NCBI RefSeq assembly: GCF_964213995.1
Contig: NC_135812.1
Location: 79,546,001 to 79,610,000 of the forward strand
DNA from: Mustelus asterias
Taxonomy: Eukaryota
DNA length: 64,000 nt
Direction of reading: 5' to 3'
Shown here: in pieces, positions 18,241-64,000 of the stretch
Layout: each line of letters opens with the position of its first letter
Position numbering within the stretch: position 1 is the stretch's first letter
Notes under the pieces: generated by a model
The model's database searches: none
What the model was told of the DNA's origin: nothing
Seen by the model: the letters and a program-made list of their open reading frames with translations, nothing else
Program-made: the position numbers and the translations under genes

Positions 18241-19357
18241 GGAGCATTGGATCTCATGGGATAAAGGGGGAGGTGGCTAGATGGGTGGAGAACTGGCTTG
18301 GTCACAGAAGACAGAGGGTGGTAGTGGAAGGGTCTTTTTCCGGCTGGATGCCTGTGACTAGTGGTGTTCCGCAGGGCTCTGTATTGGGACCTCTGCTGTT
18401 TGTGATTTATATAAACAATCTGGAAGAAGGTGTAACTGGGGTGATCAGTAAGTTTGCAGACGACACAAAATTGGCAGGACTTGCAGATAGTGAGGAGCAT
18501 TGTCAGAGGCTACAGAATGATATAGATAGGCTGGAAATTTGGGCAAAGAAATGGCAGATGGAGTTCAATCCTGATAAATGCGAAGTGATGCATTTTGGTA
18601 GAAATAATGTAGGGAGGAGCTATACGATAAATGGCAGAACCATAAAGGGTGTAGATACGCAGAGGGACCTGGGTGTGCAAGTCCACAGATCCTTGAAGGT
18701 GACGTCACAGGTGGAGAAGGTGGTGAAGAAGGCATATGGCATGCATGCCTTTATAGGACGAGGCATAGAGTATAAAAGTTGGGGTCTAATGTTGCAGATG
18801 CATAGAACTTTCGTTCGGCCGCATTTGGAATACTGCGTCCAGTTCTGGCCGCCACACTACCAGAAGGATATGGAGGCTTTGGAGAGAGTACAGAGGAGGT
18901 TTACCAGGATGTTGCCTGATATGGAGGGGCTTAGTTATGAGGAGAGATTGGGTAAACTGGGGTTGTTCTCCCTGGAAAGACGGAGGATGAGGGAAGACTT
19001 AATCGAGGTGTATAAAATTATGAAAGGCATAGATAGGGTGAACAGTGGGAAGCTTTTCCCCAGGTCGGTGGTGACGTTCACGAGGGGTCATAGATTCAAG
19101 GTGAAGGGGGGGAGGTTTAACACAGATATCAGAAGGACATATTTTACACAGAGGGTGGTGGGGGCCTGGAATACGCTGCCAGGCAAGGTGGTGGAGGTGG
19201 ACACACTGGGAACATTTAAGACTTATCTAGATAGCCACATGAACGGAGTGGGAATGGAGGGATACAAAAGAATGGTCTAGTTTGGACCAGGGAGCGGCGC
19301 GGGCTTGGAGGGCCAAAGGGCCTGTTCCTGTGCTGTATTGTTCTTTGTTGTTCTTTG
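18241..19357 (+). mobile_element. 5'-truncated CR1-clade (HER1-like) LINE, ORF2 RT C-terminal part
   Basis: ORF 18273-19280 with GVPQGSVLGP, KFADDTK, RPHLEYC; ttctttgttgttctttgttc tail. Confidence 0.93.
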
Positions 19358-20189: not shown

Positions 20190-21068
20190 AGAACAAACAA
20201 AGAACAAACAAAGAACAATACAGCACAGGAACAGGCCCTTCAGCCCTCCAAGCCCGCGCCGCTCCCTGGTCCAAACTAGACCATTCTTTTGTATCTCTCC
20301 ATTCCATTCATGTGGCTATCTAGATAAGTCTTAAACATTCCCAGTGTGTCCGCCTCCACCACCTTGCCCAGCAGCGCATTCCAGGCCCCCAACACCCTCT
20401 GCGTAAAATACGTCCTTCTGATATCCGTGTTAAACCTCCCCCCCCCTCACCTTGAATCTATGACCCCTCGTGAACGTCACCACCGACCTGGGAAAAAGCT
20501 TCCCACCGTTCACCCTATCTATGCCTTTCATGATTTTATACACCTCTATTAGGTCACCCCTCATCCTCCGTCTTTCCAGTGAGAACAACCCCGGTTTACC
20601 CAATCTCTCCTCATAACTAAGCCGTTCCATACCGGGCAACATCCTGGTAAACCTCCTCTGCACTCTCTCTAAAGCCTCCACGTCCTTCTGGTAGTGTGGC
20701 GACCAGAACTGGGCGCAGTATTCCAAATGCAGCCGAACCAACGTTCTATACAACTGCAACATCAGACCCCAACTTTTATACTCTATGCCCCGTCCTATAA
20801 AGGCAAGCATGCCATATGCCTTCTTCACTACCTTCTCCACCTGAGACGTCACCTTCAAGGATCTGTGGACTTGCACACCCAGATCCCTCTGCGTATCTAC
20901 ACCCTTTATGGTTCTTTATCGTATAGCTCCCCCCTACGTTAGTTTTACCAAAATGCATCACTTCGCATTTATCAGGATTGAACTCCATCTGCCATTTCTT
21001 TGCCCAAATTTCCAGCCTATCTATATCCTTCTGTAGCCTCTGACAATGTTCCTCACTATCTGCAAGTC
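20190..21068 (-). mobile_element. CR1/HER1 LINE fragment, inverted relative to 18241-19357, inserted in a SINE
   Basis: ORFs 20430-20876 and 20776-20988; same subfamily tail. Confidence 0.92.
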
Positions 21069-22346: not shown

Positions 22347-23124
22347 GTAATACAGGTAGGAAATATACAGTAAATGGCAGAACCCTTAAGAGTATTGATA
22401 AGCAAAGGGATCTGGGTGTACAGGTACACATGTCACTGAAAGTGGCAATGCAGGTGGAGAAGGTAGTCAAGAAGGCATATGGCATGCTTGCCTTCATTGG
22501 CCGGGGTATTGAGTTTAAAAATTGGCAAGTCATGTTGCAGCTTTATAGAACCTTAGTTAGGCCGCACTTGGAATATAGTGTTCAATTCTGGTCACCACAC
22601 TACCAGAAGGATGTGGAGGCTTCGGAGAGGGTACAGAAAAGATTTACCAGGATGTTGCCTGGTATGGCGGGCATTAGCTATGAGGAGAGGTTGGAGAAAC
22701 TTGGTTTGTTCTCACTGGAGCGACGGAGGTTGAGGGGAGACCTGATAGAAGTCTACAAGATTATGAGAGGCATGGACAGAGTAGACAGTCAGAAGCTTTT
22801 TCCCAGGGTGGAAGAGTCAATTATGAGGGGGCATAGGTTTAAGGTGCGAGGGGAAAGGTTTAAAGGAGATGTACGAGGCAGATTTTACACAGAGTAGTGG
22901 GTGCCTGGAACTCGTTGCCAGGGGAGGTAGTGGAAGCGGATACAGTCGTGACTTTTAAGGGGCGTCTTGACAAGTACATGAATAGGATAGGAATAGAGGG
23001 ATACGGTCCCCGGAAAGGTAGAGAGTTTTAGTTCAGCCGGGCAGCATGGTCGGTGTAGGCTTGGAGGGCCGAAGGGCCTGTTCCTGTGCTGTAATTTTCT
23101 TTGTTCTTTGTTATTTTCTTTGTT
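22347..23124 (+). mobile_element. CR1/HER1 LINE 3' fragment
   Basis: ORF 22430-22897 (RPHLEYSVQFW...RGHRFKV); ttctttgtt tail abuts the U2-derived array. Confidence 0.92.
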
Positions 23125-24240
23125 CACTGGAGGACGTGCAATGCCTCTTCTTACCAGCTTGGATCATGTGGATCAAGCCCAAGACAGGAGGTGAGAGCCC
23201 TGTCTTGTCAGCTTGGATGGGGAATGTCTCACTTGATGAGACTCTGAATTGGATTTGATTGGACTGAATTAGATATATAAACAAAAAAAAAGTGTAGTAT
23301 CGACATGCTGTACTTGGTTGAAGTCATAAGTTACATTGTGGCTTCATTTGAAGCAATTTTTAAAAGCGGCATCTCGGCCTTTTGGCTAAGATGCAAATGA
23401 GATCAAACACTGGAGGGGATGCAATGCCTGTTCCTACCAGCTTGGATCATGTAGATCAAGCCCAAGACAGGAAGCGGCCAGCTTGTCTTGCCAGCTTGGA
23501 TCTGGAATGTCTCGTTTGTCGAGATTTTGATTTGGACTTTGATTGCATTGAATTGGATATAACAAAAAAAATGTAGTTTTGCTGTTCTGCACTTGAGAGA
23601 AGTTAATGCGGTTACACTGAGGCTTCATTTGAAACAATTTTTTAAAAACGGCATCTAAGCCTTTTGGCTAAGATGCAAATGAGATCAAACACTGGAGGGG
23701 GTGCAATGCCCACTCCTATCAGTTTGGATCATGTAGATCAAGCCCAAGACAGGAAGAGGCTTGCCTGTCTTGTCAGATTGGATCTGTAATGTCTCACTGG
23801 TTGAGACTTTGACTAGACCAATTTGGCTTTTGATTGGATATAACTAAAAAGAAAAAGTGTAATAGCTGGTCTTGGCCAATTAGGTTAAACTGGGGCTTCA
23901 CCTGAAGCAATTTTTTAAAAAATCCATCTGGGCCTTTTGGCTAAGATGAAGCTTAGATCCAGCCCGGGAATGGGTGTAATGCCTCATCCTGTCAGCTTGG
24001 ATCTTATCTGATCGAACCCAAGATGGGATGTATATCTTGTCTTGTCAGCTTGGATCTTCCTTGTCTCTCATGTGGGGACTCTGATTGGACCAAATTGGAT
24101 TTTTGATTGGGAATAAAGTACCAAAAGGTACAAAAAAATCAAGTGTCAGATCAAGCCCAAGACGGGATGCATGCCTTATCTTGTCAGCTTGGATCTTGTT
24201 TGTCTCCCTTAAGGGGACCATTAAATGGATTCAATTTGAA
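23125..24240 (+). repeat. Tandem array of rearranged U2 snRNA-derived units (~273-282 bp period)
   Basis: TCTCGGCCTTTTGGCTAAGAT (U2 nt 7-27) at 23372-23392, with variants near 23652 and 23925; AAGTGTAGTATC at ~23290; ATTAAATGGATT at ~24220; internal hairpins and A-rich tails. Confidence 0.8.
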
Positions 24241-24772
24241 ATTCTATGCAAATGTATTGCAGCACATCAGAATGCAACATGCCAGATGTGTATAGTTTGA
24301 ACAGAATTGTGAAAATATTGAAATGATTGTAATGTTGTCATTACTGAACTGAAGCACCTCAGAGAGCATCTTGATCTCTGGGGTGGCACGGTGTTGCCTC
24401 ACAGCGCCAGGGACCTGGGTTTGATTCCAGCTCGGGTCACTGTCTGTGCGGAGTCTGTATGTTCTCCCCGTGTCTGCTTGGGTTTCCTCCGGGTGCTCCT
24501 GTTACCTCCCACAGTTCAAAAGACGTGCTGGTTAGGTGCATTGGCCATGCTAAATTCTCCCTCAGTGTCCCAGAACAGGCGCGGAGTGGGGCGACTTGGG
24601 GATTTTCACAGTTACTTCATTGCAGTGTTAATGTAAGCCTACTTGTGACAATAATAAATAAACTTTAAACTTTTAGAGAGTGTGAAAATCATTGCTATTT
24701 ACTGTTATAATAATTTGAAATGTTTTGAAATGTGTCTTTCTGATTTTATATGAATAAAGTATACTTTTGCAG
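24240..24772 (+). mobile_element. Possible L1/Tx1-type 3' tail following the U2-derived array (interrupted by a SINE at 24381-24672)
   Basis: AT-rich tail ending tatgaataaagtatacttttg, a poly(A)-signal-like terminus; family assignment from recall only. Confidence 0.35.
24381..24672 (+). mobile_element. V-SINE
   Basis: Head, V-domain, tail. Confidence 0.85.
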
Positions 24773-25069
24773 AAGGAAAGAACAGGAAGTCCATGTTAAG
24801 GTCTAAGAGTGAAGATGGATTTAATTGGTATGATTCATCTGGGTTTTTTTCTGTTGTACGAGACGTGAGACAATATAAACTTGGACGAGCTAAAAATAAA
24901 TTATTTGGAATTTCCTTAGCCAATATTTCAGAGCTAATCTGCCGGAGAGAGTAACAAAGGGAAAATACGTGCAGACGCTGGAAGGGAGCAAATTTAAGAG
25001 AGGAAATCTGGCCTTTCCCTGCTAGCAGTTTCCTATGCTAGATTTCACACACTCCTTTGCTCCTATTAC

Positions 25070-26350: not shown

Positions 26351-26816
26351 CATTCTGTAGACTAACCTAGTTAGTGCCACTGCCTTGCAAATTTATTTTG
26401 CTGAAGTGCCCATCCAATTACCTCAATTGGAATCATTAACTCATATCATGATGTTAAAAGGTGAGTTCCCATTTGAGGGGGGGGAGGGGGGCAAATCCAA
26501 CCTCACTTCACCAGTGCTGAGGGGAGGGGTTGCTTGCTGCTGTGTGGGGAAATCACCAGACTTTACCAACCAGTTCCTGTAGAAAGGCTGTTGCAAAGTT
26601 GAAGAGAGCTCTATGGGGTTTGGAAAGGCTATTTAGTGGCAATGGCCTGCTACACACCCGAAGTGGTGCTGCCGGGATAATCCCCCCCAGTTTACCTCCC
26701 ATTGCTGGGGCTTGTTGATCCCTGGCTTCTTTGGCATTGAAGTGCCCCCTCCTTCAAGAGACAGCCACTACTACGAGTGGCACTGCCTGGACTGCTGAGT
26801 TACCAGTTGTCGAATT

Positions 26817-27437
26817 GGCTCGGTGTGGGTGGGGGGGGTGGCTCGGTGTGGGTGGGGGGGTGGCTCGGTGTGGGTGGGGGGGTGGCTCGGTGTGGGTGGG
26901 GGGGTGGCTCGGTGTGGGTGGGGGGGTGGCTCGGTGTGGGTGGGGGGGTGGCTCGGTGTGGGTGGGGGGTGGCTCGGTGTGGGTGGGGGGTGGCTCGGTG
27001 TGGGTGGGGGGGTGGCTCGGTGTGGGTGGGGGGGTGGCTCGGTGTGGGTGGGGGGGTGGCTCGGTGTGGGTGGGGGGGTGGCTCGGTGTGGGTGGGGGGG
27101 GCTCGGTGTGGGTGGGGGGGGCTTGGTGTGGGCGGGGGGGTCGGTGGGTGGGGGGGTTGGTGGGGGGGGGTCGGTGGGTTTGGGGGGTCGGTGGGGTGGG
27201 GGAGGGTCGGTGTGGGGTGGGGGGGGTCAGTGTGGGGGGGGGTCGGTGTGGGGGTGGGTCGGTGGGGGGGGTCGGTGGGGGGGTGGGGTGGTTGGGGGGG
27301 GTCGGTGTGGGGGGGTCGGTGGGGGGGGCGGGGGTCGGTGGGGGGGGCGGGGGTCGGGGGAGGGGGGCGGTGGTCGGTGGGGGGGGTCGAGGGGGGGGTC
27401 AGTGGGGGCGGGGGGGGTCGGTAGCGGGGGGGCGGGT
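26817..27437 (+). repeat. G-rich ~22-bp minisatellite (G-quadruplex-prone) in gene 2 intron 1
   Basis: Unit GGCTCGGTGTGGGT-G(6-8)-T, about 14 copies, then degenerating to ggtcggtgggggg. Confidence 0.9.
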
Positions 27438-27638
27438 TGAAAGGGTCAGGCCACTATCCTCAAATGAAGTTAATTGGATAGTCCAGCACAATGCTGCACG
27501 CCTGGGTCCCATTGCCCACCAAAGCAAGTTTATCTGCTGCATTCAACAGGACATGATCCACTGAAACAAACTCAGCCTTGCGTTTTTAGTGATTTTTCTC
27601 TATTACCTTCATATTAGCAGGTGAACTGAATTCCGGTA

Positions 27639-30600
27639 ATGGATATACACCGTGCAATAATTTTCCTTAATGTCATCTTATGCAAAGGTGCATCCTTTGC
27701 ACAGAGTAAGTATTGGAATATTACTCAATTTATAGTTCATTGAACACTGATTATCACTGAGGCAATCTCAACTAATGAAAATTCTTGTTTTTCAGGCTTT
27801 GTGTCATTAGATTGTGAGAATGTAGCGACAGGAATATTGAATGAAGACACTAAACTAACATGCTCAATCCAATCAACAATAGTAAAAACATATGATTACA
27901 TTGAACTGAGTAAAATTGAAAAAAATGAAAAACGAACATCCGTGTTCAGCTTAAAAGCTGGTGCCAAACAACCTCATAATCGAATTATAATAATTCATCC
28001 AGATTCAAAAAATGTATCACTGTTAATCCAGAAAACACAGCTGCAAGATGAAGGGAATTATCAATATTATTTGGAAACAGTTTCTGGTCATGACTATCAA
28101 GTCATCACGTTGAAGGTTAAAGGTGGGTAACAGTATTCTTTCCCTGATATTCTCCCTTCTATTGGTTGCCTGTAATTAGCAACAAATTCCTATTTTGTTT
28201 GCACAGGGCGGCACGGTGGCACGGTGGTTAGCACTGCTGCCTCACAGTACCAGGGCCCAGGTTCAATTTCTGACTTGGGTCACTGTGTGGGGTTTGCACA
28301 TTCTCCCCGTGTCTGCGTGAGTTTCCTCCGGGTGCTCCGGTTTCCCCCCACAATCCAGATGACGCGCTGGTTAGGTGCATTGGCCATGCTAAATTCTTCC
28401 TCAGTGTACCAGAACAGGTGCCAGAGTGTGGCGACCAGGGGATTTTCACAGTAATTTCATTGCAGTTTTAATGTAAGTCTACTTGTGACAATAATGAATA
28501 AACTTTAAACTCAAACTTATCTAAAAGCTTGACATGTGAGAGTCAAACAGTAAGTTATAATAAGAGTCATGTTGAGAGAAGAAATCATGGTTATGCATTT
28601 CTAAAAAACCTTTCATATCTTTAGAACATCTTAAATCACTGAAGTTAGAGGAGGATGCACATGCACTATTTGCTATGTAATCTAAACAGTTTGGAATTCA
28701 CATATTCAGAAATCAGATCAAAATCCCAAATTTGAGCCATTAAATATTTTCTTCACCCCTACACATCTGTCACCTTAAGTAAATAAATTAAATCCCTACT
28801 GCTGTCATCTTATTGTTGTGGTCTATTGCTGGCTGATGAAGTGGAGAAACTGCTCCTATGTTATTCTATGCCTCTCTCTTATTACATTAATAAAAATGTA
28901 ATTTATTTTCAGCTCCATACAGTTTGCCAAAAGTGAGGTTGGCATCAAATGTCACAAGAAGGATGAAAGCGACGGACCTCATCTGTGAAACGACTGGCTA
29001 TCCACTCTCTGAGATTCACTGGTTTGTCTATGAGAAAACAAACCTCACCTCTCGTGCTGAAACTAATCACGTAAAGACCTCACAGGGGCTGTTCAAGCTC
29101 ACCAGTACACTTCCGATCACCGTTGCAGAAAGTGCTTTGGAAGGCAATTACACTTGTGCTGTGTGGAATGTGGAAGAACGTGTATATGAGGTTAAGAAGC
29201 ATTTTCCAAGTAAGTTCATAGCTTTTATCCAAAACAGTCTCAGAAAATAGCTGCTTAAAGAATTGATTTTGTTCTTTTCTTGTGTTGAAGATGAGTGCAA
29301 TGCCACAAAATCTAATTTACCACCTGTAACCATTTTTCTTGAGAAGGTTTTGTGGCTTCCTATTAAACTGCTGCCATCCTTTTCCTCTGTGCAGTTCCAA
29401 CTTCAACATGTCCCTTTATAATTAATATCATCATTATTATACATGCAAAGGTTGAAACTGGAGATTGCAATTAATTAAATTTTTCCACCCAACTTTTCAG
29501 TTCCCTTCTTGGATGAACCTAATACTCACCGGCAAAGTGAAGAAAAAAAGACTCAGGTTCTCACGGCCATCTTTGTCATTGTTGGAGCGCTTGCAATTGG
29601 AATAATCATCTTGACTATTTTTCGATTCAGGAGAAATTTATATACAGGTATGATGATTGTGTAAAGGTTTCTGATTTCTAACAAACTTTTCAGACTTTGA
29701 TACATAAATTCTGACATCTTATTGAAAAAATACCCTTGCTTGATTTTTTTTTGTTTTTGAATACAGCCCAGAATCTAGAAACCTGATAATTCTGTTTAAA
29801 CATATTATCTGGCCAAGAAAGGGAGGGCGGAATCTGAAACACTCTCAATGGCTTCAGGTTCTGCCTGGCATTCTTATTCACTTCCCAGAGTTGTGTGCTT
29901 ATTAGGTTCTTAGCCCAATCATTGGATGTCCAGTACCTCTCTGAGGATGAAAACATTCACCAAATATTTGCTTAAGAAATAGAAAGAAGTTTAATGCTCT
30001 GGATTTTCCCTACTTGACCTGAGTCTTCTTGCTTCCTTACATTCTAGTTGGTTAAAGTGGATAGGTGAAAAGGTGGCTGATTAACGCACCACGATAATAA
30101 GCCTGTTACCCAGCTTCTAGCTAGAGAATGTAGAAAAACTCCAGATTAGTCACATTGAATAACTCTGGAGCACCTTCTGTTGAGCTGCATCCAAACATCA
30201 AACAGAATTGGAGGAGGTAGCTGCAGGAATGAGTCATCTGTGACACTTCAAATCACAAATTCCAAGCTGTAGTGTTTAGTACAGGAAGAAGCCAATCAGA
30301 TAGGGGAAAAAAGGAAACATTCTCTATGTAGGAACTACAACTTCTAAAAAAATCATCCTCTAGTTGTGATCAACGTTTATTGCCCTGAAAATACATTTTT
30401 CTTTGTAGCCTTTTATAACTGACTGGCCTGCTGGGCTAATTCAGGGATCAGTTAAGAATCAACCGCATTGGTGTAGGACTTGAGACACATATCAGACAGA
30501 CAGAGTAAGAACTGTAGGTTTCCTTTGCAAAAAAAGATTAGTAAACCCTTTTGTTTTTACAACATGGTCAAATATTGACCAAAGATTCAGGGTCACCTTC

Positions 30601-36224: not shown

Positions 36225-36414
36225 TAACTGCGTTCTTAAAGTTACAAAGCCAATGCTCAGAGTGGACTGGGCAAACCCAAATCCATCTCCTTCCTTGTTC
36301 CAAAAACCAAATTCAAACTGAGTCCGATTCATGGCCCCAGAAGAGAAACATACAAGATCCAAGCTAACAAGATAAGGCATTGCACCCATCTTGGGCTTGA
36401 TCTGACATTTGATC
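36225..36414 (-). pseudogene. Dispersed U2-variant copy: modified 5' module plus U2 3' half (Sm-site-like, stem III)
   Basis: Minus strand reads gatcaaatgtcagatcaagcccaagatggg...cttatcttgttagcttggatc...ggtttttggaacaaggaaggagatggatttgggtttgcccagtccactctgagcattggc, aligning to U2 GGATTTTTGGAGCAGGGAGATGGAATAGGAGCTTGCTCCGTCCACTCCACGCATCGAC. Confidence 0.75.
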
Positions 36415-37727
36415 ATATACTCTTGTGCGCTGCAATCACATTTTCTCGCTTCTGTTAAATCCCCATCCGCCACCTCTTTACTTTAGGTTTCCCTGCCTTA
36501 TTGGACAGATAAGTGACTTGGTCATGAGGAAATAACACTGGGCTTACAATTGGAGTTGCTGCATTCTTGGCATGACTCCCAGACTCAAGGTGACGTTATA
36601 TGTTACTGGCTGTAATAGGATTCCTTGAAACTGTCCTGAAATAGTCCAACATGAACATCTCCCAAAACTAAACGAGATTCAGAACTCACGAAACAATGAA
36701 ATGTTCTCAGGTTTGGACTTGTTGCTAAACTCAGTTTTAAATGCTGGGGGCCATGAATGAGCTGATTTGGACAAGTTTCAAAAATCCTCTCCGGGGGAAC
36801 AATTAGCAGCTCACTTTTCCGGGAAATCATATGAGAAAAGCTAAAGCGTGCATGAAAAGTCTTGGCAACTGGGTACGCTGAGTGAAGTCCCAATCCAGGA
36901 AATGCCACTCCATTGTTCAAGAAAACTGTCCCCAATACATTCTAGAAATTATAACTCCCTTTACCACTGCTCTGCTTTAATCAGTCCCTGTGAAAATGAA
37001 AATTTTCCATTAACCATTTTATTTTTGCCACGAATCCCTGTTCTCTTTATTTATGTACAGTCCTGACTACTGTTAGAAGATTGTAGACAAATCCTGCATT
37101 CCTTGCCTGCCCCCCATCTCCCCTCCTCCCTCCCCCCTGCCCCTTCTGCTAATTCCATATCTCACTCATCATGACTGAAATCTCTTTTAATCTGCGGCAA
37201 TGGATCTTTCAGCAATATTTCCAAGAAATTGATTACAGCAAGGCAGGAGCAAGAACATCCAATTTTATTGGGTTGCTTATGTTGCTTTACAAACTTGGAC
37301 AGCCAGAGTTTCCAATCCCTGAATGAACAGATTCTTTTCATTCATTGTGAAGGTTAATGACAGATTTTCTGTGTGCTATCATGATTGGAATGCAATTAGA
37401 ATTATTCTGGGAAAATAGTGTGAATGGTTTACCGGTGAAGGAGCCTTAGCTCCTCCTGCTCACCTGAATGACTCAGCTGTGTGCAAGTAGATAGGAACGC
37501 TGAACACCTCACCTAGAGTGTTCATTACTACAGGAAAACGTATTCTTTATCTGAGACAGTTCAGGGAGGGCTCTGAAATATGCTGACATTTATGTTCTAT
37601 ATTGCAGCCAACTGTACTCAGTTGAGTTATAAAAAGGTAAACCATATGGATCATCTTTAATTACATTACAGTGCAGCATATACATCAAAGTATTGTTCTA
37701 CTGTAACACTCAATGTCAACATCAAAA

Positions 37728-42532: not shown

Positions 42533-45500
42533 ATGGATTTACACCGTACAATAATTTTCCTTAATGTCATCTTATGCAAAGATGCATTCTTTGCGCAAAG
42601 TAAGTACTGGAGTATTACTCAATTTATAGTTCATTGAACACCGATTATCACTGAGGCAATGTGAACTAATGGAAATTCTTGTTTTTCAGGCTTTGTGACA
42701 TTAGATTGTGAGGATGTAGTGACAGGAATATTGAATGAAGACACTAAACTAACATGCTCAATCCAATCAACAATAGTAAAAACATATGATCACGTTACAC
42801 TGAGCAAAATGGAAAAAAATGAAAAACGAACATCCGTGTTCAGCTTAAAAGCTGGTGCCAAACAACCTCATAATCGAATTATAATAATTCGTCCGGATTC
42901 AAATGATGTATCACTGTTAATCCAGAAAACACAACTGACAGATGAAGGGACTTATCAATATGATTTGGAAACAGTTTCTGGTCACAGGGATAAAGAAATC
43001 ACACTGAAGGTTAAAGGTGGGTAACAATATTCTTTCCCTGATATTCTCCCTTGTATTGGTTGCCTTTAATTAGCATCAAATTCTTATTTTATTCTCACAT
43101 CTAAAATCTTAACATGTGAGATAGGCAAAATGTAAGTTATAACCAGAGTCATGTTGAGAGAAGAAATCATGATTGTGCATTTCCAGAAAACCTTTCATAT
43201 CTTTGGAAATCTCAAAACATATTTTAGCCTTTGAAGTTAGCGGAGGATGCATTGATGATTTAGGTGACCACATTGTAAGGCAGGATAATCAGGATTTGCT
43301 TATTATAGAGGGAGTACAGCGAAGGGCTACCAGGCTGATTTCAAAGATGGCAGGTCTGTCATATGAGGAGAGACTAAGATGGTTAGGATTATATTCACTG
43401 GAGTTTAGAAAAGTGCGAGGATCTCATAGAAACTTATAAAATTGGCACAGTGGTTAGCACTGCTGCCTCACAGCACCAGGGACCTGGGTTCGATTCCTGG
43501 TTTGGGTCACTGTCGGTGTAGAGTCTGCACATTTTCACTGTGTCTGCGTGGGTTTTTTCCCCCAGTCCGAAAGATGTGCTGGTTAGGTGTATTGGCCATG
43601 CTAAATTCTCCCCAGTGTACCTGAACAGGTGCTGGAGTGTGGCGATTAGGGAATTTTCACAGTAACATCATTGCAGTGTTAATGTAAGCCTACTGGTGAC
43701 ACTAATAAATACACTTTTAAACTTTCTAACAGGGTTAGACAGGGTAGATTCAGAAAGAATGTTCCCATTGGTGGGGGAATCCAGAACTAGGGATAAGGGG
43801 TGAACCTTTTAGAAATGAGATGTGGAGAAATTTCTTCACCCAGAGAGTGGTGAATGTGTGGAATTCACTCCCACAGAATGTAATTGAGGCCACAACATTG
43901 TCTGATTTGAAGAAAAAATTAGATATAGCTCTGGGAGCAAGGGATACGGGAGGAAGGAGGGAATCAGGATATTGAATTTGATGATCAGCCATGGTCAAAA
44001 TGAATGGCGGAGCAGACTCGAAGGGCTGAATGGCCTACTCCTGCTTCTTGTTTCTATGTACTATGATTTGATGCACACCCACTAGTTACTATGTAATCAA
44101 ACTCAATATCCAGTCTATCGATACTAAATAAGCTTGATTCGCAGAGGTTGCAGATGTATTCTAGAAAAATATCCAAGATTTCTATACAAGCATATATTTG
44201 GCACAAAATGTAGAAAGAAAAGTGCAATAAAATCTGACTAATGAGTTTTGAATTGAAATATTAAGAATGCAGGCCAAAGTCATAAACTGACACCATTAAA
44301 TATTATCTCTTTCACACACTGTATCAAAGGTAATCTAAGTGTAAAGCTGATCTAAGTGTAATTAATTTATTGTGGTAAATCTGGGAATTACTATTTACTG
44401 AGAACTGTTGTTCTTTACTGGGTGCAGAAGAAGCATAAAAAACTGTTTTATATCATTTTACAGTGCTTTCTCATCACAATAATAACAGCATAATCATGTT
44501 TAGCTCCATACAGTTTGCCAAATGTGACCTCACTCTTGAATACTACAACAAGCACTATAAATCTAAATTGTGAAACAACTGGATACCCACAGGCACAGAT
44601 ACATTGGTTTGTCAATGGAAACCTCACATCTGAGTCTAATAGTTACAGTAATAAAACCCCAGCGGGACTGATGAAGATCACCAGCATACTTCAAACCAAT
44701 AAAGGGCGAATTACCTCGGAAGACAATTATACTTGTGCTGTGTGGAATATAGACGAGAATGTATATGAGGTCCAGGAACAGCTTTCGAGTAAGTTCATAG
44801 CACTTATTCTTCAAATCATTTCAACAAATAATTTTTTAAATTATTAATTTTAATGAATAATTAAAATTTTAAAACTTAAATTCATTCTATTTGCTCTCAA
44901 TATGTGAATAATGCCACAAGGCTCTATTTAATACCCATGATTATATCCTCTGAGAAGCTTGTGGATCGTTATAAACTGTTGCTGTCCTTTTCCTCAGAGT
45001 ATTATTTGAACGTCGACTTTGCTGTTGTCTTAGTCATGGAAGCATAGAAATAAGTTATGCATATTTATGCATATGAAGACTGATACTGGAATTAATAATT
45101 AATTAAATTGTTCCCCCCCCCCCCCCCCCCCCCCCCCCACATTTTCATTTTCAGACTTCGGTCCAACTCAACGAAGAATAAAGAGGAAGAAATCGAATCT
45201 CATCACTGTCTTTGTGATTATTGGAGTAGGTTTTCTTGCACTAGCAATCTTGGTGGTTTGGCAACTGCAGAAAACAAGTCAGCCAGGTATGATGATTATA
45301 GAAATGTTTCTGGCTCCTTTTAAAAGTTGTAATTATTGCAAGAATAATTACATAAGCTTCTGTTTAAAATATGTTTGCTCAGCCTTTGCACATGCCTAGA
45401 ATCTGGTAACCAATTCAATTATAGAACATAGAACCAGACAGCTCAGGAACAGGCCCTTCAGCCCACGATGTTATGCCCAACATGATGCCAAATTAATCTA

Positions 45501-54610: not shown

Positions 54611-56577
54611 GCTAGCCAAAGAGAAAAAGGAAGCATTTGTCAAAGCTAGGAGGCTGGGAACACACGAAGCAAGTGTGGAATACAAGGAAAATAGAAAGAA
54701 ACATAAGCAAGGAGTAAGAAGAGCTAAAAGGGGTCATGAAAAAGCATTGGCCAGCAGGATTAAGGAAAATCCAAGGCTTTTTACACATATATAAAGAGCA
54801 AGAGGGTTGGCCCACTTGAGGACAAGGGAAGGAATCTATGTGTGGAGCCAGAGGAAATGGGCGAGGAATTAAATGAGTACTTTGCGTCAGTATTCACCAA
54901 AGAGAAGGACTTGGTGGATGATGAGTCTGGGAAAGGGTGTGTAGATAGTTTGAGTCATGTTGAGATCAAAAAGGAGGTATTGGGGTTCTTGAGAAACATC
55001 AAGGTAGACAAGTCTCCAGGGCCTGATGGGATATACCCCAGAATACTGAGAGAGGCAAGAGAGCAAATTGCTGGAGCCTTGAGAGAAATCTTTGTATCCT
55101 CACTGGCTAGAGGGGAGGTCACAGAGGATTGGAGAATAGCCAATGTTGTTCCTTTGTTTAAGAAGGGTAGCAAGAATAATCCAGGTAATTACAGGCCAGT
55201 GAGCCTTACATCAGTGGTAGGGAAATTATTGGAGAGGATTCTTCAAGACAGGATTTATTCCCACTTGGAAATAAGTGGACGTTTTAGTGAGAGACAACAT
55301 GGTTTTATGAAGGGGAGGTCGTGTCTCACGAACTTGATTGAGTTTTTTGAGGAAGTGACGAAGATGATTGAGGGTAGGGCAGTGGATGTTGTCTACATGG
55401 ACTTCAGTAAGGCCTTTGACAAGGTCCCTCATGGCAGACTGGTGCAGAAGGTGAAGTCGCATGGGATCAGAGGTGAGCTGGCAAGGTGGATACAAAATTG
55501 GCTCGGTCAAAGAAGACAGAGGGTAGCAGTGGAAGGGTGCGTTTCTCAATGGAGGGCTGTGACAAGTGGTGTTCCTCAGGGATCAGTGCTGGGACCTTTG
55601 CTGTTTGTAATATATATAAACGATTTGGAGGAAAATGTAACTGGTTTGATTAGTAAGTTTGCGGACAACACAAAGGTTGGTGGATTTGCGGATAGCAATG
55701 AGGACCATCAGAGGATACAGCAGGATATAGATCAGTTGGAGACTTGGGCGGAGAGATGGCAGATGAAGTTTAATCCGGACAAATGTGAGGTAATGCATTT
55801 TGGAAGGTCTAATACAGATAGGAAATATACAGTAAATGGCAGAACCCTTAGGAGTATTGATAGGCAAAGGGATCTGGGTGTACAGGTACGCAGGTCACTG
55901 AAAGTGGCAATGCCAGTGGAGAAGGTAGTCAAGAAGGCATACGGCACGCTTGCCTTCATCGGCCGGGGTATTGAGTTTTAAAATTGGCAAGTCATGTTGC
56001 AGCTTTATAGAACGTTAGTGAGGCCGCACTTGGAATATAGTGTTCAATTCTGGTTGCCACACTACCAGAAGGATGTGGAGGCTTTGGAGAGGGTACAGAA
56101 AAGATTTACCAGGATGTTGCCTGGTATGGAGGGCATTAGCTATGAGGAGAGGCTGGAGAAACTTGGTTTGTTCTCACTGGAGCGACGGAGGTTGAGGGGA
56201 AACCTGATAGAAGTCTACAAGATTATGAGAGGAATGGACAGAGTGGATGGTCAGAAGTTTTTTCCCAGGGTGGAAGAGTCAACTACTAGGGGGCATAGGT
56301 TCAAGGTGTGAGGGGCAAGTTTTAAAAGAGATGTACGAGGCAGATTTTTTACACAGAGGGTGGTGGGTGCCTGGAATTCGTTGCCGGGGGAGGTAGTGGA
56401 AGCGGATACGGTAGTGGCTTTTAAGGGACATCTTGACAAGTACATGAATGAGATGGGAATAGAGGGATATGGTCCCTGGAAGAGTAGGGGGTTTTAATTA
56501 AGTCAGGCAGCATGGTCGGTGCAGGCTTGGAGGGCCGAAGGGCCTGTTCCTGTGCTGTAATTTTCTTTGTTCTTTGT
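54611..56577 (+). mobile_element. 5'-truncated CR1/HER1 LINE, inactivated ORF2
   Basis: ORFs 54842-55981 and 55994-56311: KSPGPDG, NYRPVSLTS, DFSKAFDKV, FADN (catalytic D lost), two nonsense codons. Confidence 0.95.
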
Positions 56578-58080: not shown

Positions 58081-60705
58081 TGTAATTAGTTTAGGGGAAA
58101 GAAGACAGAGATTGCCTGGACTACGTCTCAAAAAGAAAATAAATAACCGTGGTTTACAAACCACAAATCACGGTTAACATTGGAGAGCAACCAGAAGAAA
58201 TACATCGGGAATTTTCCATTGATGCCAGTTAAACTCGGGATCGGGGCCAAAGTTCATTTGTGGGAAGTGCAAATAAAAATAAAGGCACTGTATCAAGAAA
58301 TAAAGAGGCCACACCCAACAAAAGAAAATAGAGGGAAGATTGATATGGACAAGTCACCTCATTGCCTTGCCTTTGTTTGCCTGATAACTGTGATAGTGAA
58401 TGAGTCAATCACAGAGTGTAGGATGGACTTTTACATTGATGAGAAAAGATCAGGTTAATACTTCCTATCAGTTGCTAACCCAACAATTTAGCAGATTTAT
58501 TGATTTAATTTCAAAGTCTGAATAGCTGGTACACTAGTATGACCATCACACTGGCATACTCTGATGACCAAACCTTCCCCCTGCTCCTCATCTCCTGCTT
58601 TCGTCCAGCTTCCTAAGTGCTTGAGGCCCCTTTTACCTGCTTCACGTCTCCCTGAGGCTCCTCTCCTGCTCATTCCCTCTGTCATCCATGTTGCTTCCAC
58701 TGATGTAAGTGAACAACCATCTCATTACGGGATGTGTTCCCGGAAAAACCCGTAAGATTTGCATGAGTCAAAAAGATTGTTATGAAAAGTTCCCGTGCCT
58801 TTGTGCATAATCGAACATGGGATATAATACTGCGGATGAGCAGCGGAAACTTGCAAGTCAATCCGAATTTCACTATTGTACCGATAGGTGCCTGCAGTAA
58901 CATAAACAGCTGGCAGAGGGCAACAGTTGCATAAAATACCTGTTCCAGGTTAGCTACCTGCCAATAGAGGGTGTCAGATATACTGAAGTTCCTTCAAAAT
59001 GTCCAAACATCTCAAAAAGGTACAAATGAGAAAAACTATTTAGCTTGGTCATATGGAATTTAAAAATATACCTTCCCTCTTATAAGAATATAAGAACTAA
59101 GAGCAGCAGCAGGCAATTCAGTCCCTTGAGTCTGTTCTGCCATTCAATACAATCATGGCTGATCTCATCTCAGCCTCATCTCCATCTTCCCGTCCACTCC
59201 CCATAACCCTTAATCTCATTATTAACCAAAAACCTATCTATCTCCTTCAATTTGTTCAGTGTTCCGGTGTCCACTGTACTGTGGGGTAGAGAATTCCACG
59301 GATTCAGGACTCTTTGAGTGAAGTAGTTCCTCCTCATTTCTGTTTTAAATCTGCTACTCCTCAGCCTAAAACTATTCTAGAATATCCAACAAGGAAAAAC
59401 ATCTACTTTACGTCTACCTTGTCAATCCCTTTTAGCGTCTTACATACTTCCTCTCATTCTTCTAGACTCCAACATGTAGAGGCCTAAACTGTTCAATCTC
59501 TCTTCATAAGATAAGTCCTTCATACCTGGAGCAATCTAGTGAACATTCTCTAGGTCACCTCTAATGTATTTACATCTTTCCTTAAGTAAGGGGACCAAAA
59601 CTGGGTGCAGTACTCTAGATGCAGTCTCACCAATGCCCTGTACAGTTACAAAAGCACTTCCCTACTTTTATACTCTATTCCATTAGCAATGAATGCCAAA
59701 ATTCAATTTTCCTTCCTTATTACTTGCTGCACCACATAGAGTCATAGAATCATAGAGGTTTACATCATGGAAACAGGTCCTTCGGCCCAACTTGTCCATG
59801 CCACCCTTTTTTTGTAAACCCCAAAGCTAGTCCCAATTGCCCACATTTGGCCCATATCCCTCTATACCCATGTTACCCATGTAACTGTCTAAATGCTTTT
59901 TAAAAGACAAAATTCTACCTGCCTCTACTACTACCTCTGGCGGCTTGTTCCAGACACTCACCACCCTCTGTATGAAAGAATTGCCCCTCTGGACCCATTT
60001 GTAACTCTCCCCTCTCACTTTAAACCTATGCCCTCTAGTTTTAGACTCCCCTACCTTTGGGAAAAGATGTTGACTATCTAGCTGATCTATGCCCCTCATT
60101 ATTTTATAGACCTCTATAAGATCACCCCTCAGCCTTCGACGCTCCAGAGAAAAAAGTTCCAGTCTATCAAACCTCTCCTTATAACTCAAACCATCAAGTC
60201 CCGGTAGCATCCTAATAAATCTTATCTGCATTCTTTCTAGTTTAATAATATCCTTTCTATAATAGGGTGACCAGAACTGTACACAGTATTCCAAGTGTGG
60301 CCTTACCAATGTCTTGTACAACTTCAACAAGACGTCCCAACTCCTGTATTCAATGTTCTGACCAATGAAACCAAGCATGCTGAATGCCTTCTTCACCACT
60401 CTGTCCACCTGTGACTCCGCTTTCAAGGAGCGATGAACATGTGCCCCTAGATCTCTTTGTTCTATAACTCTCCCCAACGCCCTACCATTAACTGAGTAAG
60501 TCCTGCCCTGGTTCAATCTACCAAAATGCATCACCTCGCATTTATCTAAATTAAACTCCATCTGCATACCAACTTTCTGCAGTTCATGCCCAAGGACACC
60601 CAGATCTCCCTGCACTGAAACATTTTGAAATTTCTCTCCATTTAGATAGTAAGTTGCCTTTTTATTCCTCTAACCAAAATGGATACCCTCACATTTATCC
60701 ACCAT

Positions 60706-63409: not shown

Positions 63410-64000
63410 CACACTACTAGTACAGCTTGCCAACCAGAAACAAACTCATTTGTCCCCACTCTCTGCTTCCTGGTTAGCCAATGCTCTATCCAAAACAATA
63501 TATTAAACCCAGACCCATGGGATCTCACCTTATGTCATACCTTTTTTGCAGCACCTTATCAAAAGCCATCTGGAAGTCCAGATACACTACATCTACAGAA
63601 TCCCTATGATCCACTCTGCTTATTACATCTTCAATGAACTCTAACAAATCAGTCAAACATTATTTATCCTTCATAAAACCATGCTGATTCTGACGGATTA
63701 TATTTTGACTTTCTAAATGTCATGTTACTACTTCGTTAATAATGGATTCAAACAGTGACATACATTAAGCTAACTGGTCTATAGTTTCCTACTCTCTGCC
63801 TTTTTGAACAGGGGTGTTACATTAGCTTTTTTTCTAATTCACTGGAACCCGTCCAGAATCCAGGAAATTTTGGAATAGTATAACCAATGCCTCCACTATC
63901 TCTGCTGCCACTTCCTTGAAGATCCGAGGATGAAGGCCATCAGGACCTGGGGACTTGTCCACCTTTTATCCAAATAGTTTGCTCAGTACTTCTTCCTTCG

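What the first reader, a model, noticed from the sequence alone, without database searches (positions are those of the whole stretch)
23125..24772. Tandem array built from rearranged U2 snRNA modules: candidate shark SINEU-like or variant-U2 system
Seen: ~280-bp units start near 23365, 23647 and 23920, with partial units at 23125 and 24138. Each full unit opens with U2 stem-loop I; nt 7-27 match exactly at 23372-23392. Where U2 has its branch-point-pairing GUAGUA, the unit repeats AGATCAA(G) and inserts new sequence that folds back on the downstream U2-like CTGTCTTGTCAGCTTGGATC (GATCAAGCCCAAGACAGG...CCTGTCTTGTCAGCTTGGATC); this module occurs twice per unit. A stem-IIb-like hairpin (gtctc..gagac), an AATTGGATTT segment and an A-rich tail follow. 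The spacer after the tail restarts with U2 AAGTGTAGTATC (~23290), as if a poly(A)-tailed U2 variant sits inside another U2 5' half at about nt 27/28. The hairpin stems differ in sequence between units but stay paired. The array runs into an AATAAA-ended tail. Known: snRNA-headed SINEs (SINEU) were described in crocodilians, and U2-targeting retroelements (Keno, Utopia) exist. Inference: a U2-derived, probably LINE-mobilised, self-nesting element, or a structured variant snRNA family, in sharks. I do not know of a description.
Basis: partly seen in the sequence, partly recalled or inferred. Interest (0 to 1): 0.82.

Follow-up and report, generated by a model that had tools for sequence, protein, structure and literature searches.

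The report
Shark U2-derived retroposon cluster
This stretch is a head-to-tail cluster of old, decayed copies of a short mobile element that was built from pieces of the U2 spliceosomal RNA and is scattered in very many copies through this shark-like genome; it is not a set of working U2 genes.

Summary
A 282-bp tandem array lies at 23125-24138: one 5'-truncated unit, two full units and one short unit. A longer single-module copy follows, running to about 24790 and interrupted by an unrelated SINE.

Each unit opens with U2 stem-loop I, an exact 20-21 nt match. It then carries two copies of a hairpin module, a stem-IIb-like hairpin, an Sm-like stretch and an A-run. An ~80-nt spacer follows that restarts at U2 nt 29.

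Rfam does not call any of it U2 (best 19.5 bits, cut-off 46). Alignment to a verified vertebrate-type U2 with shuffle controls does show U2 descent.

Contigs of two whole-genome runs pile on the units at roughly 10^2 to 10^4 times the depth of the unique flank. Some have boundaries exactly at U2 nt 1. So this is a dispersed, SINEU-like, U2-headed retroposon family, and the array is one local cluster of it.

Working variant snRNA genes are very unlikely. Self-nesting and a Tx1/Keno partner remain untested.

This scan's first readers noted U2-headed elements at many other places in this genome (108 notes, none followed up). I found no description in print for cartilaginous fish.

The parts
23125..23364 (+). 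Unit u0. It is 5'-truncated inside module 1 and abuts the (TTCTTTG)n tail of an upstream LINE fragment. It contains module 2, a IIb-like hairpin, an Sm-like stretch, an A-run, and spacer 23290-23364 that begins with U2 nt 29-40.
   Evidence: (nhmmer E 8.6e-66)
23365..23646 (+). Unit u1, a full 282-bp period. U2 stem-loop I lies at 23372-23392 (exact), module 1 at 23392-23450, module 2 at 23449-23505, the IIb-like hairpin at about 23510-23526, the A-run at 23563-23571 and the spacer at 23570-23646.
   Evidence: (head z 6.7, 0 of 500 shuffles)
23647..23919 (+). Unit u2, a full period. The stem-loop I-like stretch is at 23654-23674. Spacer 23855-23919 aligns to U2 nt 29 to about 70.
   Evidence: (spacer z 5.4, 1 of 1000 shuffles)
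23920..24138 (+). Unit u3, a short-form element running from U2 nt 1 (stem-loop I-like at 23927-23947) to the A-run at 24131-24138, with no spacer. Paralogous contigs elsewhere in the genome begin exactly at 23920.
   Evidence: X1 record 3, X3 record 21; head z 5.2, 0 of 500
24139..24380 (+). Copy u4, the long single-module form lacking U2 nt 1-26. It starts at U2 nt 27-40 with the hexamer changed, then has one hairpin module, a IIb-like hairpin, an Sm-like stretch, an 11-nt exact match to U2 nt 157-167, and further family sequence.
   Evidence: depth 1.4e5 falling to 3.0e3; z 3.9, 2 of 500; E 3.2e-46 to the model that includes it
24381..24670 (+). An unrelated, very high-copy SINE inserted into the long form. 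It is not part of the U2-derived family.
   Evidence: depth 1e6-2e7; joint 24381 to 24698 skipping it in 3 (X1) and 4 (X3) contigs
24671..24790 (+). The 3' end of the long form, still repeated in the genome. It contains GAATAAAGTA, which resembles the GGGAATAAAGTA at the end of u3. Repetition stops within 24742-24808.
   Evidence: depth 6298 and 4831, then 17.7
36225..36425 (-). Dispersed copy, 5'-truncated at about U2 nt 24. It has one hairpin module followed by U2 up to nt 150 or beyond (Sm site and stem-loop III recognisable).
   Evidence: score 64, z 9.9, 0 of 500; U2 nt 22-150; 3' half alone z 6.4, 0 of 1000

Best explanation
The region is a cluster of decayed copies of a dispersed, non-coding, U2 snRNA-derived retroposon family of this elasmobranch genome. 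It works like the crocodilian SINEU elements.

The family ancestor was a U2 sequence that gained about 22 extra nucleotides next to the branch-point-pairing region. Those nucleotides pair with the downstream stem-IIa region to make a long hairpin. Later forms doubled that module, lost the U2 3' half and ended in an A-run (short form). Others kept a longer 3' region (long form).

Shown here: U2 descent, the module anatomy, and a high and dispersed copy number in two whole-genome runs, with some copies starting exactly at U2 nt 1.

Inferred: copies spread as RNA copied by a LINE reverse transcriptase.

Inferred with less confidence (about 0.45 of the total): this particular array arose when a two-part unit was duplicated in tandem by unequal crossing-over. 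That unit is one short-form element sitting in a plain U2-like sequence whose nt 29 onward forms the spacer. Later exchange between units would have followed. The copies here are relics, not genes.
For: U2 descent:
- cmscan aligns 23372-23391 to RF00004 positions 7-26 without a mismatch.
- The reference is L011 824-1014, RF00004 190.7 bits.
- In Smith-Waterman with dinucleotide shuffles, the dispersed copy scores 64 against a shuffle mean of 24.9 (sd 4.0), with 0 of 500 shuffles as high. It covers U2 nt 22-150. Its 3' half alone has 0 of 1000.
- Heads: u1 0 of 500, u3 0 of 500, u2 2 of 500. u4 has 2 of 500.
- Spacer 2 against U2 nt 28-112: 1 of 1000.
- The unit bodies link to these by nhmmer, E 3.5e-10 to 3.7e-17.

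Dispersal (80% likeness):
- Unique-flank bins 24809-25000 have summed depth 17.0-23.3 (X1) and 6.5-12.6 (X3).
- The 18 array bins have 1.4e3 to 8.2e5 (X1) and 3.3e2 to 1.5e5 (X3).
- 39-115 distinct contigs are listed per variant site.
- X1 record 3 and X3 record 21 align from exactly 23920, with unlike sequence upstream.
- The single-module form recurs as joint 23952 to 24171 in 7, 6 and 1 contigs.

Decay: pairwise identity of units is 55-89% by segment, with indels.

Earlier first-reader notes of U2-headed elements elsewhere in this genome are leads only.
Against: - The tool warns that summed contig depth is not a copy number, so 10^2 to 10^4 is only an order of magnitude.
- I found no target-site duplication around the dispersed copy. 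That copy ends in a T-run, not poly(A).
- A-runs in the array are short, 7-9 nt.
- I saw no partner LINE in the window, and the family 3' end matches nothing else there.
- Rfam does not recognise the dispersed copy as U2 even at E 10.
- Unit bodies, two of the three spacers and module 2 of u1 are not significantly U2-like on their own.
- Between u1 and u2, the head plus hairpin modules are 89% identical (124 of 139). The rest is 69% (90 of 130), Fisher p 6.6e-5. Uniform neutral decay after a simple duplication does not predict this. It could mean gene conversion, separate insertions, or constraint on the hairpins.
- Other genomic copies carry the spacer-to-head junction too (X1 record 2, X3 record 17). 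So the two-part unit may itself be a mobile form rather than a local product.
Confidence: 0.75

Rival explanations
1. Self-nesting. The array grew by repeated insertion of family members into the U2-like target sequence carried by earlier copies. The target is regenerated after each insertion, as known target-specific LINEs sometimes insert in tandem. It did not grow by duplication of DNA already in place.
For: - After all 4 of 4 A-runs the sequence resumes inside U2 at nt 27-31 (23290, 23570, 23855, 24139).
- The u3/u4 junction has a different downstream partner (long form) from the other three, so there are at least two independent junctions at the same U2 place.
- The same sequence can be read as an insertion after nt 40 with nt 29-40 duplicated (my reading by eye).
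- Depth falls from left to right in equivalent bins (for example 4.0e5, 2.3e4, 3.4e4, 1.8e4). This fits younger units on the left.
- Identity along the unit is uneven.
- Kojima and Jurka 2015 (passages) report tandem insertion of Utopia in U2 genes.
- Unchecked notes from elsewhere in this genome describe a Keno-like Tx1 LINE with U2 heads.
Against: - The downstream U2 starts at nt 27-31, not at nt 39 as reported for Keno and Utopia.
- The three spacer junctions may be one event copied by duplication.
- No partner LINE or clean duplicated target could be examined here.
- The regular period (283, 282, 273) is what duplication gives most simply.
Confidence: 0.3
2. One retroposition event with serial template switching. 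The reverse transcriptase stalled at the base of stem-loop I of one U2-like RNA and jumped to the poly(A) end of the next. This laid down a 5'-truncated concatemer in a single insertion.
For: - All units have the same orientation.
- The leftmost unit is 5'-truncated (23125).
- A-run to U2 nt 27-31 junctions are of the kind template switching gives.
- Kojima 2015 argues that template switching added U1/U2 pieces to SINEU (section 18).
Against: - Strict alternation of spacer-type and full-type templates three times over is improbable by chance.
- The left end abuts a LINE tail, which may have truncated the array later.
- No duplicated target flanks the whole block.
Confidence: 0.12
3. A tandem family of working variant U2-like snRNA genes with an altered branch-point-pairing region and an added hairpin.
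For: - Stem-loop I is exact in u1 and nearly so in u2 and u3.
- The hairpin is kept in 9 of 9 module copies, with 88.9% of cells paired.
- The structured 5' part is better kept than the rest.
Against: - There is no Rfam hit at gathering in 64 kb. The best U2 score is 19.5 bits against a cut-off of 46.
- The hexamer that pairs with the branch point is changed in every head.
- Stem-loops III and IV are absent from the array units.
- Only about 80 nt lie between units, and that stretch is itself U2-derived, leaving no room for the usual upstream promoter elements (recalled knowledge, not tested).
- Fold energies are only modestly better than shuffles (z -0.8 to -2.6).
- Thousands of diverged copies are the signature of a repeat.
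Confidence: 0.04
4. An ordinary locus-specific minisatellite grown from one decayed U2 pseudogene, with no family elsewhere.
For: Within the window the only other copy is one fragment at 36225-36425.
Against: Depth on the units in two whole-genome runs is two to four orders of magnitude above the unique flank. Contigs run into unlike flanks. The dispersed copy shares the family-specific extra 22 nt.
Confidence: 0.03

Closest known systems
SINEU (crocodilian SINEs with U1/U2 snRNA-derived heads; Kojima 2015, PMC4494074: abstract and sections 10, 12, 18 read)
   Same: - A short non-coding retroposon whose 5' part is U2.
- The body is made of further U2 pieces.
- Internal deletion of U2, as in SINEU-3 (5' 32 bp plus middle 83 bp of U2 plus unrelated 3' sequence).
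- Repeated addition of U2 pieces, as in SINEU-1.
- A-rich 3' end.
- Internal T-runs that argue against RNA polymerase III.
- Subfamilies with 5' extensions.
   Different: - The host is an elasmobranch. The paper states that no SINEU was found outside crocodilians.
- There is a family-specific 22-nt addition that forms a long hairpin, and that module is doubled.
- Apparent abundance is high.
- The long form ends without a clear poly(A).
- Sequence relationship to the crocodilian consensus was not tested. Consensus sequences are in supplements and Repbase, which I did not see.
Keno (Tx1 clade) and Utopia, LINEs that insert into U2 snRNA genes (Kojima and Jurka 2015, PMC4640811: passages only)
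   Same: - U2 is the substrate.
- The family's extra 22 nt lies, by my eye, within about 2 nt of their insertion site (downstream U2 starting at nt 39).
- Tandem insertions in U2 are reported for Utopia.
   Different: - No LINE coding sequence of that kind was examined here.
- The A-run junctions in the array are at U2 nt 27-31, not 39.
- The aligner itself preferred to read the extra 22 nt as a diverged duplicate of U2 nt 22-40.
snRNA retropseudogenes and snRNA/LINE chimeric retrocopies made by template switching (as summarised in Kojima 2015, section 18)
   Same: The dispersed copy at 36225-36425 looks like a 5'-truncated U2 retrocopy. The A-run to internal-U2 junctions resemble template-switch joints.
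   Different: The shared 22-nt addition and shared module structure show one amplifying lineage, not independent copies of normal U2.

Membership tests
SINEU-type retroposon | 5' region derived from U1 or U2 snRNA | tested here: met
   Exact match to RF00004 positions 7-26. Heads against a verified U2: 0 of 500, 0 of 500 and 2 of 500 shuffles as high.
SINEU-type retroposon | Short (under about 500 bp) and non-coding | tested here: met
   Short form is about 219 bp (23920-24138) and the period is 282 bp. No ORF of 100 aa or more overlaps 23125-24790.
SINEU-type retroposon | Many dispersed copies of the same structure | tested here: met
   array bins are 10^2 to 10^4 times the unique flank in X1 and X3. 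Contigs have boundaries at U2 nt 1 and unlike flanks. Depth is only a rough proxy for copy number.
SINEU-type retroposon | 3' poly(A) tail | tested here: inconclusive
   A-runs of 7-9 nt end u0-u3. The long form ends near GAATAAAGTATAC without a poly(A). The dispersed copy ends in a T-run.
SINEU-type retroposon | Retroposition marks (target-site duplication or empty orthologous site) | tested here: inconclusive
   No convincing duplication flanks the dispersed copy. Array junctions are ambiguous. Empty sites could not be examined.
SINEU-type retroposon | Mobilised by a Tx1-clade LINE (shared target preference or 3' end) | not testable with these tools
   I saw no Tx1 in the window; by eye the long ORFs are other LINE fragments, three of which Pfam confirms only as RVT_1. 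The family 3' end matches nothing else in the window. Only unchecked notes point to a Keno-like Tx1 elsewhere.
U2 spliceosomal RNA gene (RF00004) | Covariance-model score at or above the curated cut-off (46 bits) | tested here: not met
   0 hits at gathering in 64 kb. Best scores are 19.5, 19.0 and 17.3 bits. No U2 hit at E 10 or less on the dispersed copy or u4.
U2 spliceosomal RNA gene (RF00004) | Intact branch-point-pairing hexamer after stem-loop I | tested here: not met
   Heads read ATGAGATC (u1, u2) or CTTAGATC (u3) where the verified U2 has GTAGTATC. The intact hexamer survives only in spacer 0, at 23295-23300.
U2 spliceosomal RNA gene (RF00004) | Sm site followed by stem-loops III and IV | tested here: not met
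   Array units end in an A-run after an Sm-like stretch. Bodies are not U2-like on their own (z 0.0-1.8). Only the dispersed copy keeps stem-loop III sequence.
Keno/Utopia insertion in U2 | Element joined to U2 with the downstream U2 starting at nt 39 | tested here: not met
   Downstream U2 after the A-runs starts at nt 27-31. Only the internal 22-nt addition lies near nt 39-40, and that placement is by eye.

The most novel reading that the evidence does not exclude
Elasmobranchs may carry a U2-directed LINE/SINE system (a Keno-like Tx1 partner) in which the SINE's head and reiterated modules are copies of the enzyme's own U2 target. Every insertion would then create new targets and the family would nest into itself, building head-to-tail arrays like this one. 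The long hairpin, kept better than the rest of the unit, would be the RNA feature that the partner enzyme or the transcription/processing machinery needs.
Probability: 0.2. Interest if true: 0.7.

Novelty: new member of a known kind. Interest (0 to 1): 0.45.

Why it matters
SINEs with snRNA-derived heads are in print for crocodilians only. How elements derived from an RNA-polymerase-II snRNA gene get transcribed is an open question stated in that paper.

An abundant second lineage in sharks would give an independent case for attacking that question. It has many copies, several structural forms (full U2 with a 22-nt addition, doubled module, short and long forms) and possibly a Keno-like partner. 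It would also help in dating snRNA-targeting LINE activity in early vertebrates.

For genome annotation, the family should be masked and not called as U2 genes or pseudogene arrays. This single locus adds little beyond showing the family's forms side by side.

Tried and rejected
- **Rfam at gathering on the whole window:** nothing. At E 10 or less on the array, the hits to MIR530 (24.6 bits, cut-off 85), U8 (21.9, cut-off 41), mir-2229 and others are far below their cut-offs. I treat them as chance.
- **Rfam on the dispersed copy:** only U6atac at 12.7 bits, also treated as chance.
- **More family copies in public collections:** the viral-contig scan with the U2 21-mer found 0. The metagenome scan with a family-specific two-motif pattern found 0.
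- **The search of earlier findings by sequence:** nothing.
- **Raw-read run X22:** it turned out to be a distant organism. 271 reads laid, all on the unrelated SINE core and 0 on the array, so it gave no copy-number estimate.
- **Run X15:** it is only guessed to be RNA. It holds family copies inside contigs of 1237 and 2252 nt, so I draw no conclusion on expression.
- **U2 similarity of parts on their own:** spacers 0 and 1, the unit bodies, module 2 of u1 and the u4 3' part are not significant alone. The spacers do not resemble the start of the long form.
- **Other copies of the family 3' region or spacers in the window:** none.
- **Target-site duplication around the dispersed copy:** none convincing.
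- **Compensatory change as evidence of selection:** rejected as decisive, because several double changes are CpG-decay pairs and the copies are related (sequence by eye).

**Literature.**
- SINEU plus shark gave 1 paper, irrelevant.
- A six-term search was uninformative: 2270 papers, and the 20 listed all lack SINEU.
- SINEU plus snRNA gave 7 papers, none on cartilaginous fish by title and abstract start. Passages were read in two of them.
- U2 snRNA plus SINE plus shark gave 5 papers, none relevant by listing.
- The U2-derived / snRNA-derived / SINE / retroposon search had nothing on cartilaginous fish among the 25 listed. A review's passages name only the crocodilian case.
- Repbase, Dfam and paper supplements were not seen. 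They could hold this family, the crocodilian consensus sequences or the exact Keno junctions.
Full report
**What is there.** Between 23125 and 24138 the + strand carries a tandem array with a period of 282 bp. TRF reports 23125-23812 (2.4 copies, 82% matches, score 890) and 23340-24110 (2.8 copies, 77%, score 655). An independent repeat finder gives spacings of 283 and 282, and of 282 and 273.

The array has the following parts:
- a unit truncated at its 5' side (u0, from 23125);
- two full units (u1 from 23365, u2 from 23647);
- a short unit that ends in an A-run without a spacer (u3, 23920-24138);
- a structurally different copy (u4, from 24139) that has one module instead of two and runs on to the right.

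The left end abuts the (TTCTTTG)n tail of a LINE fragment whose last ORF is at 22430-22897. I judged this by similarity of its translation to the RVT_1-bearing ORF at 18273-19280. Within the 64-kb window, the only other relative is a fragment on the minus strand at 36225-36425.

**Is it U2?** Rfam finds no family at its curated cut-offs anywhere in the window. With relaxed thresholds, U2 (RF00004) appears only at 19.5, 19.0 and 17.3 bits against a cut-off of 46. The best of these is simply the exact 20-nt match of 23372-23391 to model positions 7-26. The dispersed copy and u4 get no U2 hit at E 10 or less.

To test descent rather than function, I needed a real U2:
- The window's 21-mer retrieved 120 metagenome loci.
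- Of the 112 candidates extracted from them, one (L011) stood out in similarity to the dispersed copy.
- Rfam confirms L011 as U2 at 190.7 bits, next to a U1 gene at 162.7 bits.

Local alignment against the L011 U2, with dinucleotide-preserving shuffles as control, gave these results:

| Segment | U2 region matched | Score or z | Shuffles as high |
|---|---|---|---|
| Dispersed copy | nt 22-150 | score 64 vs mean 24.9 (sd 4.0), z 9.9 | 0 of 500 |
| Dispersed copy, 3' half alone | nt 106-150 | z 6.4 | 0 of 1000 |
| Head of u1 | nt 3-40 | z 6.7 | 0 of 500 |
| Head of u3 | nt 0-40 | z 5.2 | 0 of 500 |
| Head of u2 | nt 3-40 | z 4.0 | 2 of 500 |
| u4 | nt 43-105 | z 3.9 | 2 of 500 |
| Spacer of u2 | nt 29 to about 70 | z 5.4 | 1 of 1000 |

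Several parts are not significant on their own:
- the spacers of u0 and u1 (z 0.7-2.0);
- the unit bodies (z 0.0-1.8);
- module 2 of u1 (z -0.5);
- the u4 3' part (z 0.9, despite an 11-nt exact match to U2 nt 157-167).

These parts are tied to the significant ones by homology within the family: nhmmer E 3.5e-10 to 3.7e-17, and blastn between spacers at 3e-10 to 2e-5.

**Anatomy of a unit.** In the numbering of the verified U2, a full period reads as follows:
- U2 nt 1-27 (stem-loop I), then nt 28-40 with the branch-point-pairing hexamer changed.
- About 22 extra nucleotides, then a U2 nt 40-62-like stretch. Together these form module 1.
- Module 2, which repeats nt 32-40, the extra 22 nt and nt 40-62.
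- A stem-IIb-like hairpin, an Sm-like stretch, and ATATAA plus an A-run.
- A spacer that restarts at U2 nt 29 (AAGTGTAGTATC at 23290-23301, degenerate at 23570 and 23855) and runs as plain, decayed U2 without the extra 22 nt.

The extra 22 nt pairs with the following U2-like stretch. All 9 of 9 module copies fold into the same two-helix hairpin. Energies are -14.9 to -21.7 kcal/mol and z is -0.8 to -2.6, so they are only modestly better than shuffles.

The aligner placed the extra stretch of the dispersed copy on U2 nt 22-40, which reads it as a diverged duplicate of that segment. By eye it can equally be read as an insertion after nt 39-40, or as an inverted copy of the downstream arm. I cannot decide between these readings.

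The dispersed copy and u4 show the simpler single-module form. The dispersed copy still has U2 through at least nt 150. These forms suggest a series: U2 with a 22-nt addition, then doubling of the module, then loss of the 3' half.

**A dispersed family.** I laid the contigs of two whole-genome runs on 23000-25000 at 80% likeness. One of the runs has a contig 99.6% identical over the unique flank 24734-25000.

| Region | X1 summed depth | X3 summed depth |
|---|---|---|
| Unique bins 24809-25000 | 17.0-23.3 | 6.5-12.6 |
| 18 array bins | 1.4e3 to 8.2e5 | 3.3e2 to 1.5e5 |
| Array bins without stem-loop I | 2.3e4 to 4.0e5 | not extracted |

Other points from the same call:
- 39-115 distinct contigs are listed at each of the variant sites on the units.
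- The tool warns that summed depth is no copy number. I take it only as two to four orders of magnitude above single copy.
- X1 record 3 (444 nt) and X3 record 21 (491 nt) align from exactly 23920 (U2 nt 1), with unlike sequence on the other side, as solitary insertions would.
- X1 record 2 and X3 record 17 extend 57-69 nt upstream of the head into the spacer. The spacer bins are themselves 3e4 to 6e4 deep in X1, except 23804-23870 at 1.4e3. So the spacer-plus-head arrangement also exists elsewhere.
- A joint from 23952 to 24171 with 27 other letters between, which is the single-module form, stands in 7, 6 and 1 contigs of three runs.
- The repeated sequence continues past u4 (2.2e4, then 3.0e3). 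It is interrupted by an unrelated, enormously abundant SINE at 24381-24670 (up to 2e7), which other copies lack (joint 24381 to 24698 in 3 and 4 contigs). It resumes at 6.3e3 and 4.8e3, and stops within 24742-24808.
- A raw-read run of another organism (X22) put 0 reads on the array.
- Run X15 is only guessed to be RNA. It carries copies inside contigs of 1237 and 2252 nt, so nothing can be said about expression.

**Not working snRNA genes.** The reasons are:
- The Rfam scores are far below the cut-off.
- Every head has lost the hexamer that pairs with the branch point.
- The array units lack stem-loops III and IV.
- The 80 nt between units is itself decayed U2.
- Pairwise identity between units is 55-89% by segment, with many indels.

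On the hairpin, 88.9% of cells pair (shuffles 85.9%, 8 of 500 as high). 3 of 18 pairs change on both sides (7 cells, 6 of 500). These come down to one to three events among related copies, and some are the two decay products of paired CpGs (sequence by eye).

One point remains unexplained. Between u1 and u2, the head and both modules are 89% identical (124 of 139). The rest of the period is 69% identical (90 of 130), Fisher p 6.6e-5. In its 3' body, u2 shares motifs with u3 rather than u1. Gene conversion, separate insertions of different family members, or constraint on the structured part could each give this.

**How the array arose.** I see three mechanisms.
- *Tandem duplication by unequal crossing-over.* The duplicated unit would be a short-form element lying in a plain U2-like sequence. 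This explains the regular period most simply, and I give it about 0.45.
- *Repeated insertion into the U2-like target carried by earlier copies (self-nesting), about 0.3.*
  - For it: all 4 of 4 A-runs are followed by U2 restarting at nt 27-31. These include the u3/u4 junction, whose downstream partner is different.
  - For it: depth on equivalent bins falls from left to right, and identity along the unit is uneven.
  - Against it: the junction is not at nt 39, where Keno and Utopia leave their downstream U2 (passages of PMC4640811).
- *A single event with serial template switching, about 0.12.* It fits the common orientation and the 5'-truncated left end. It does not fit the strict alternation of two template types.

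None of these can be settled from one locus.

**Comparison with what is known.** The closest described kind is SINEU (Kojima 2015, PMC4494074; I read the abstract and sections 10, 12 and 18). As described there:
- They are short retroposons with U1- or U2-derived heads and poly(A) tails.
- Further U1/U2 pieces were added repeatedly at the 5' end.
- One family (SINEU-3) is an internally deleted U2.
- Some subfamilies have 5' extensions.
- Internal T-runs exclude polymerase III.
- A Tx1-clade LINE is the proposed driver.

The shark family shares the first five of these features. It differs in host, in its hairpin-forming addition and doubled module, and in apparent abundance. The Tx1 link, target-site duplications and sequence relationship to the crocodilian families could not be tested here.

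My searches of the paper library found no description of an snRNA-headed SINE in cartilaginous fish (passages). Repbase, Dfam and supplements were not available, so a database entry cannot be excluded.

First readers of this scan flagged U2-headed elements at many other places in this genome. 108 notes fit "U2 snRNA" and none has been followed up. Eight notes link them to a Keno-like Tx1 LINE. These are unchecked leads. Only the abundance and the copy at 36225-36414 were tested here.

**Verdict.** This is one decayed cluster of a dispersed, U2-derived, SINEU-like retroposon family. As far as I could search, it is a new member of a known kind. Interest is moderate for the family and low for this locus by itself.

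Noticed in passing
window 24381-24670: A SINE (it starts GGGGTGGCACGGTG and ends in an A/T-rich tail) inserted into the U2-derived long form. Summed contig depth is up to 2e7 against about 20 for unique sequence. Its core is also hit by reads of a distant organism (X22), so it carries a widely conserved SINE core.
   Followed up: partly
window 22430-23124: The 3' end of a LINE, ending in a (TTCTTTG)n microsatellite that directly abuts the truncated first unit of the array. Its post-RT ORF is similar to the ORFs at 18273-19280, 20430-20876 (-) and 59827-60615 (-). Pfam gives RVT_1 for 18273-19280 and 54842-55981.
   Followed up: partly
window 27801-28130 and 28924-29250; 42695-43024 and 44515-44847: Two paralogous pairs of exon-like ORFs. 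For the first pair Pfam gives a V-set Ig domain (E 1.3e-7) followed by an Ig constant-like domain, including a weak butyrophilin-type C2-set hit. The array lies about 3 kb upstream of the first pair.
   Followed up: partly
window 24776-24835: Directly after the end of the repeated sequence there is an acceptor-like ttttgcag, about 55 nt of unique sequence containing ATG, and a donor-like gtatga. This is a possible small exon, by eye only. Depth shows the region is single-copy.
   Followed up: no
window 26731-27564: A G-rich minisatellite that reads as long open frames of GGGV/WLGVGG-type repeats in three + frames.
   Followed up: no
window 61879-63528 (-): A 549-aa ORF with an RVT_1 match (E 4.7e-10) and a C-terminal stretch that looks by eye like a GIY-YIG nuclease, as in Penelope-like elements.
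   Followed up: partly
L058 (metagenome contig JGI1221J15618_1174789, 1760 bp): A tandem array with a period of about 37 nt, made of U2 nt 5-40-like units. There are 9 exact stem-loop I 21-mers and more degenerate ones, in an unknown eukaryote. This is an independent case of U2 5' modules forming a minisatellite.
   Followed up: no
L005, L014, L056, L084, L065, L113 (metagenome contigs): U2 5' parts that break off into unrelated sequence at about nt 34-39. In L065 and L113, U2 resumes after an insert of about 66 nt. This is the place where U2-targeting LINEs are reported to insert.
   Followed up: no
window 23365-23919: Between u1 and u2, the head plus hairpin modules are 89% identical while the rest of the period is 69% identical (Fisher p 6.6e-5). 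This is unexplained.
   Followed up: partly
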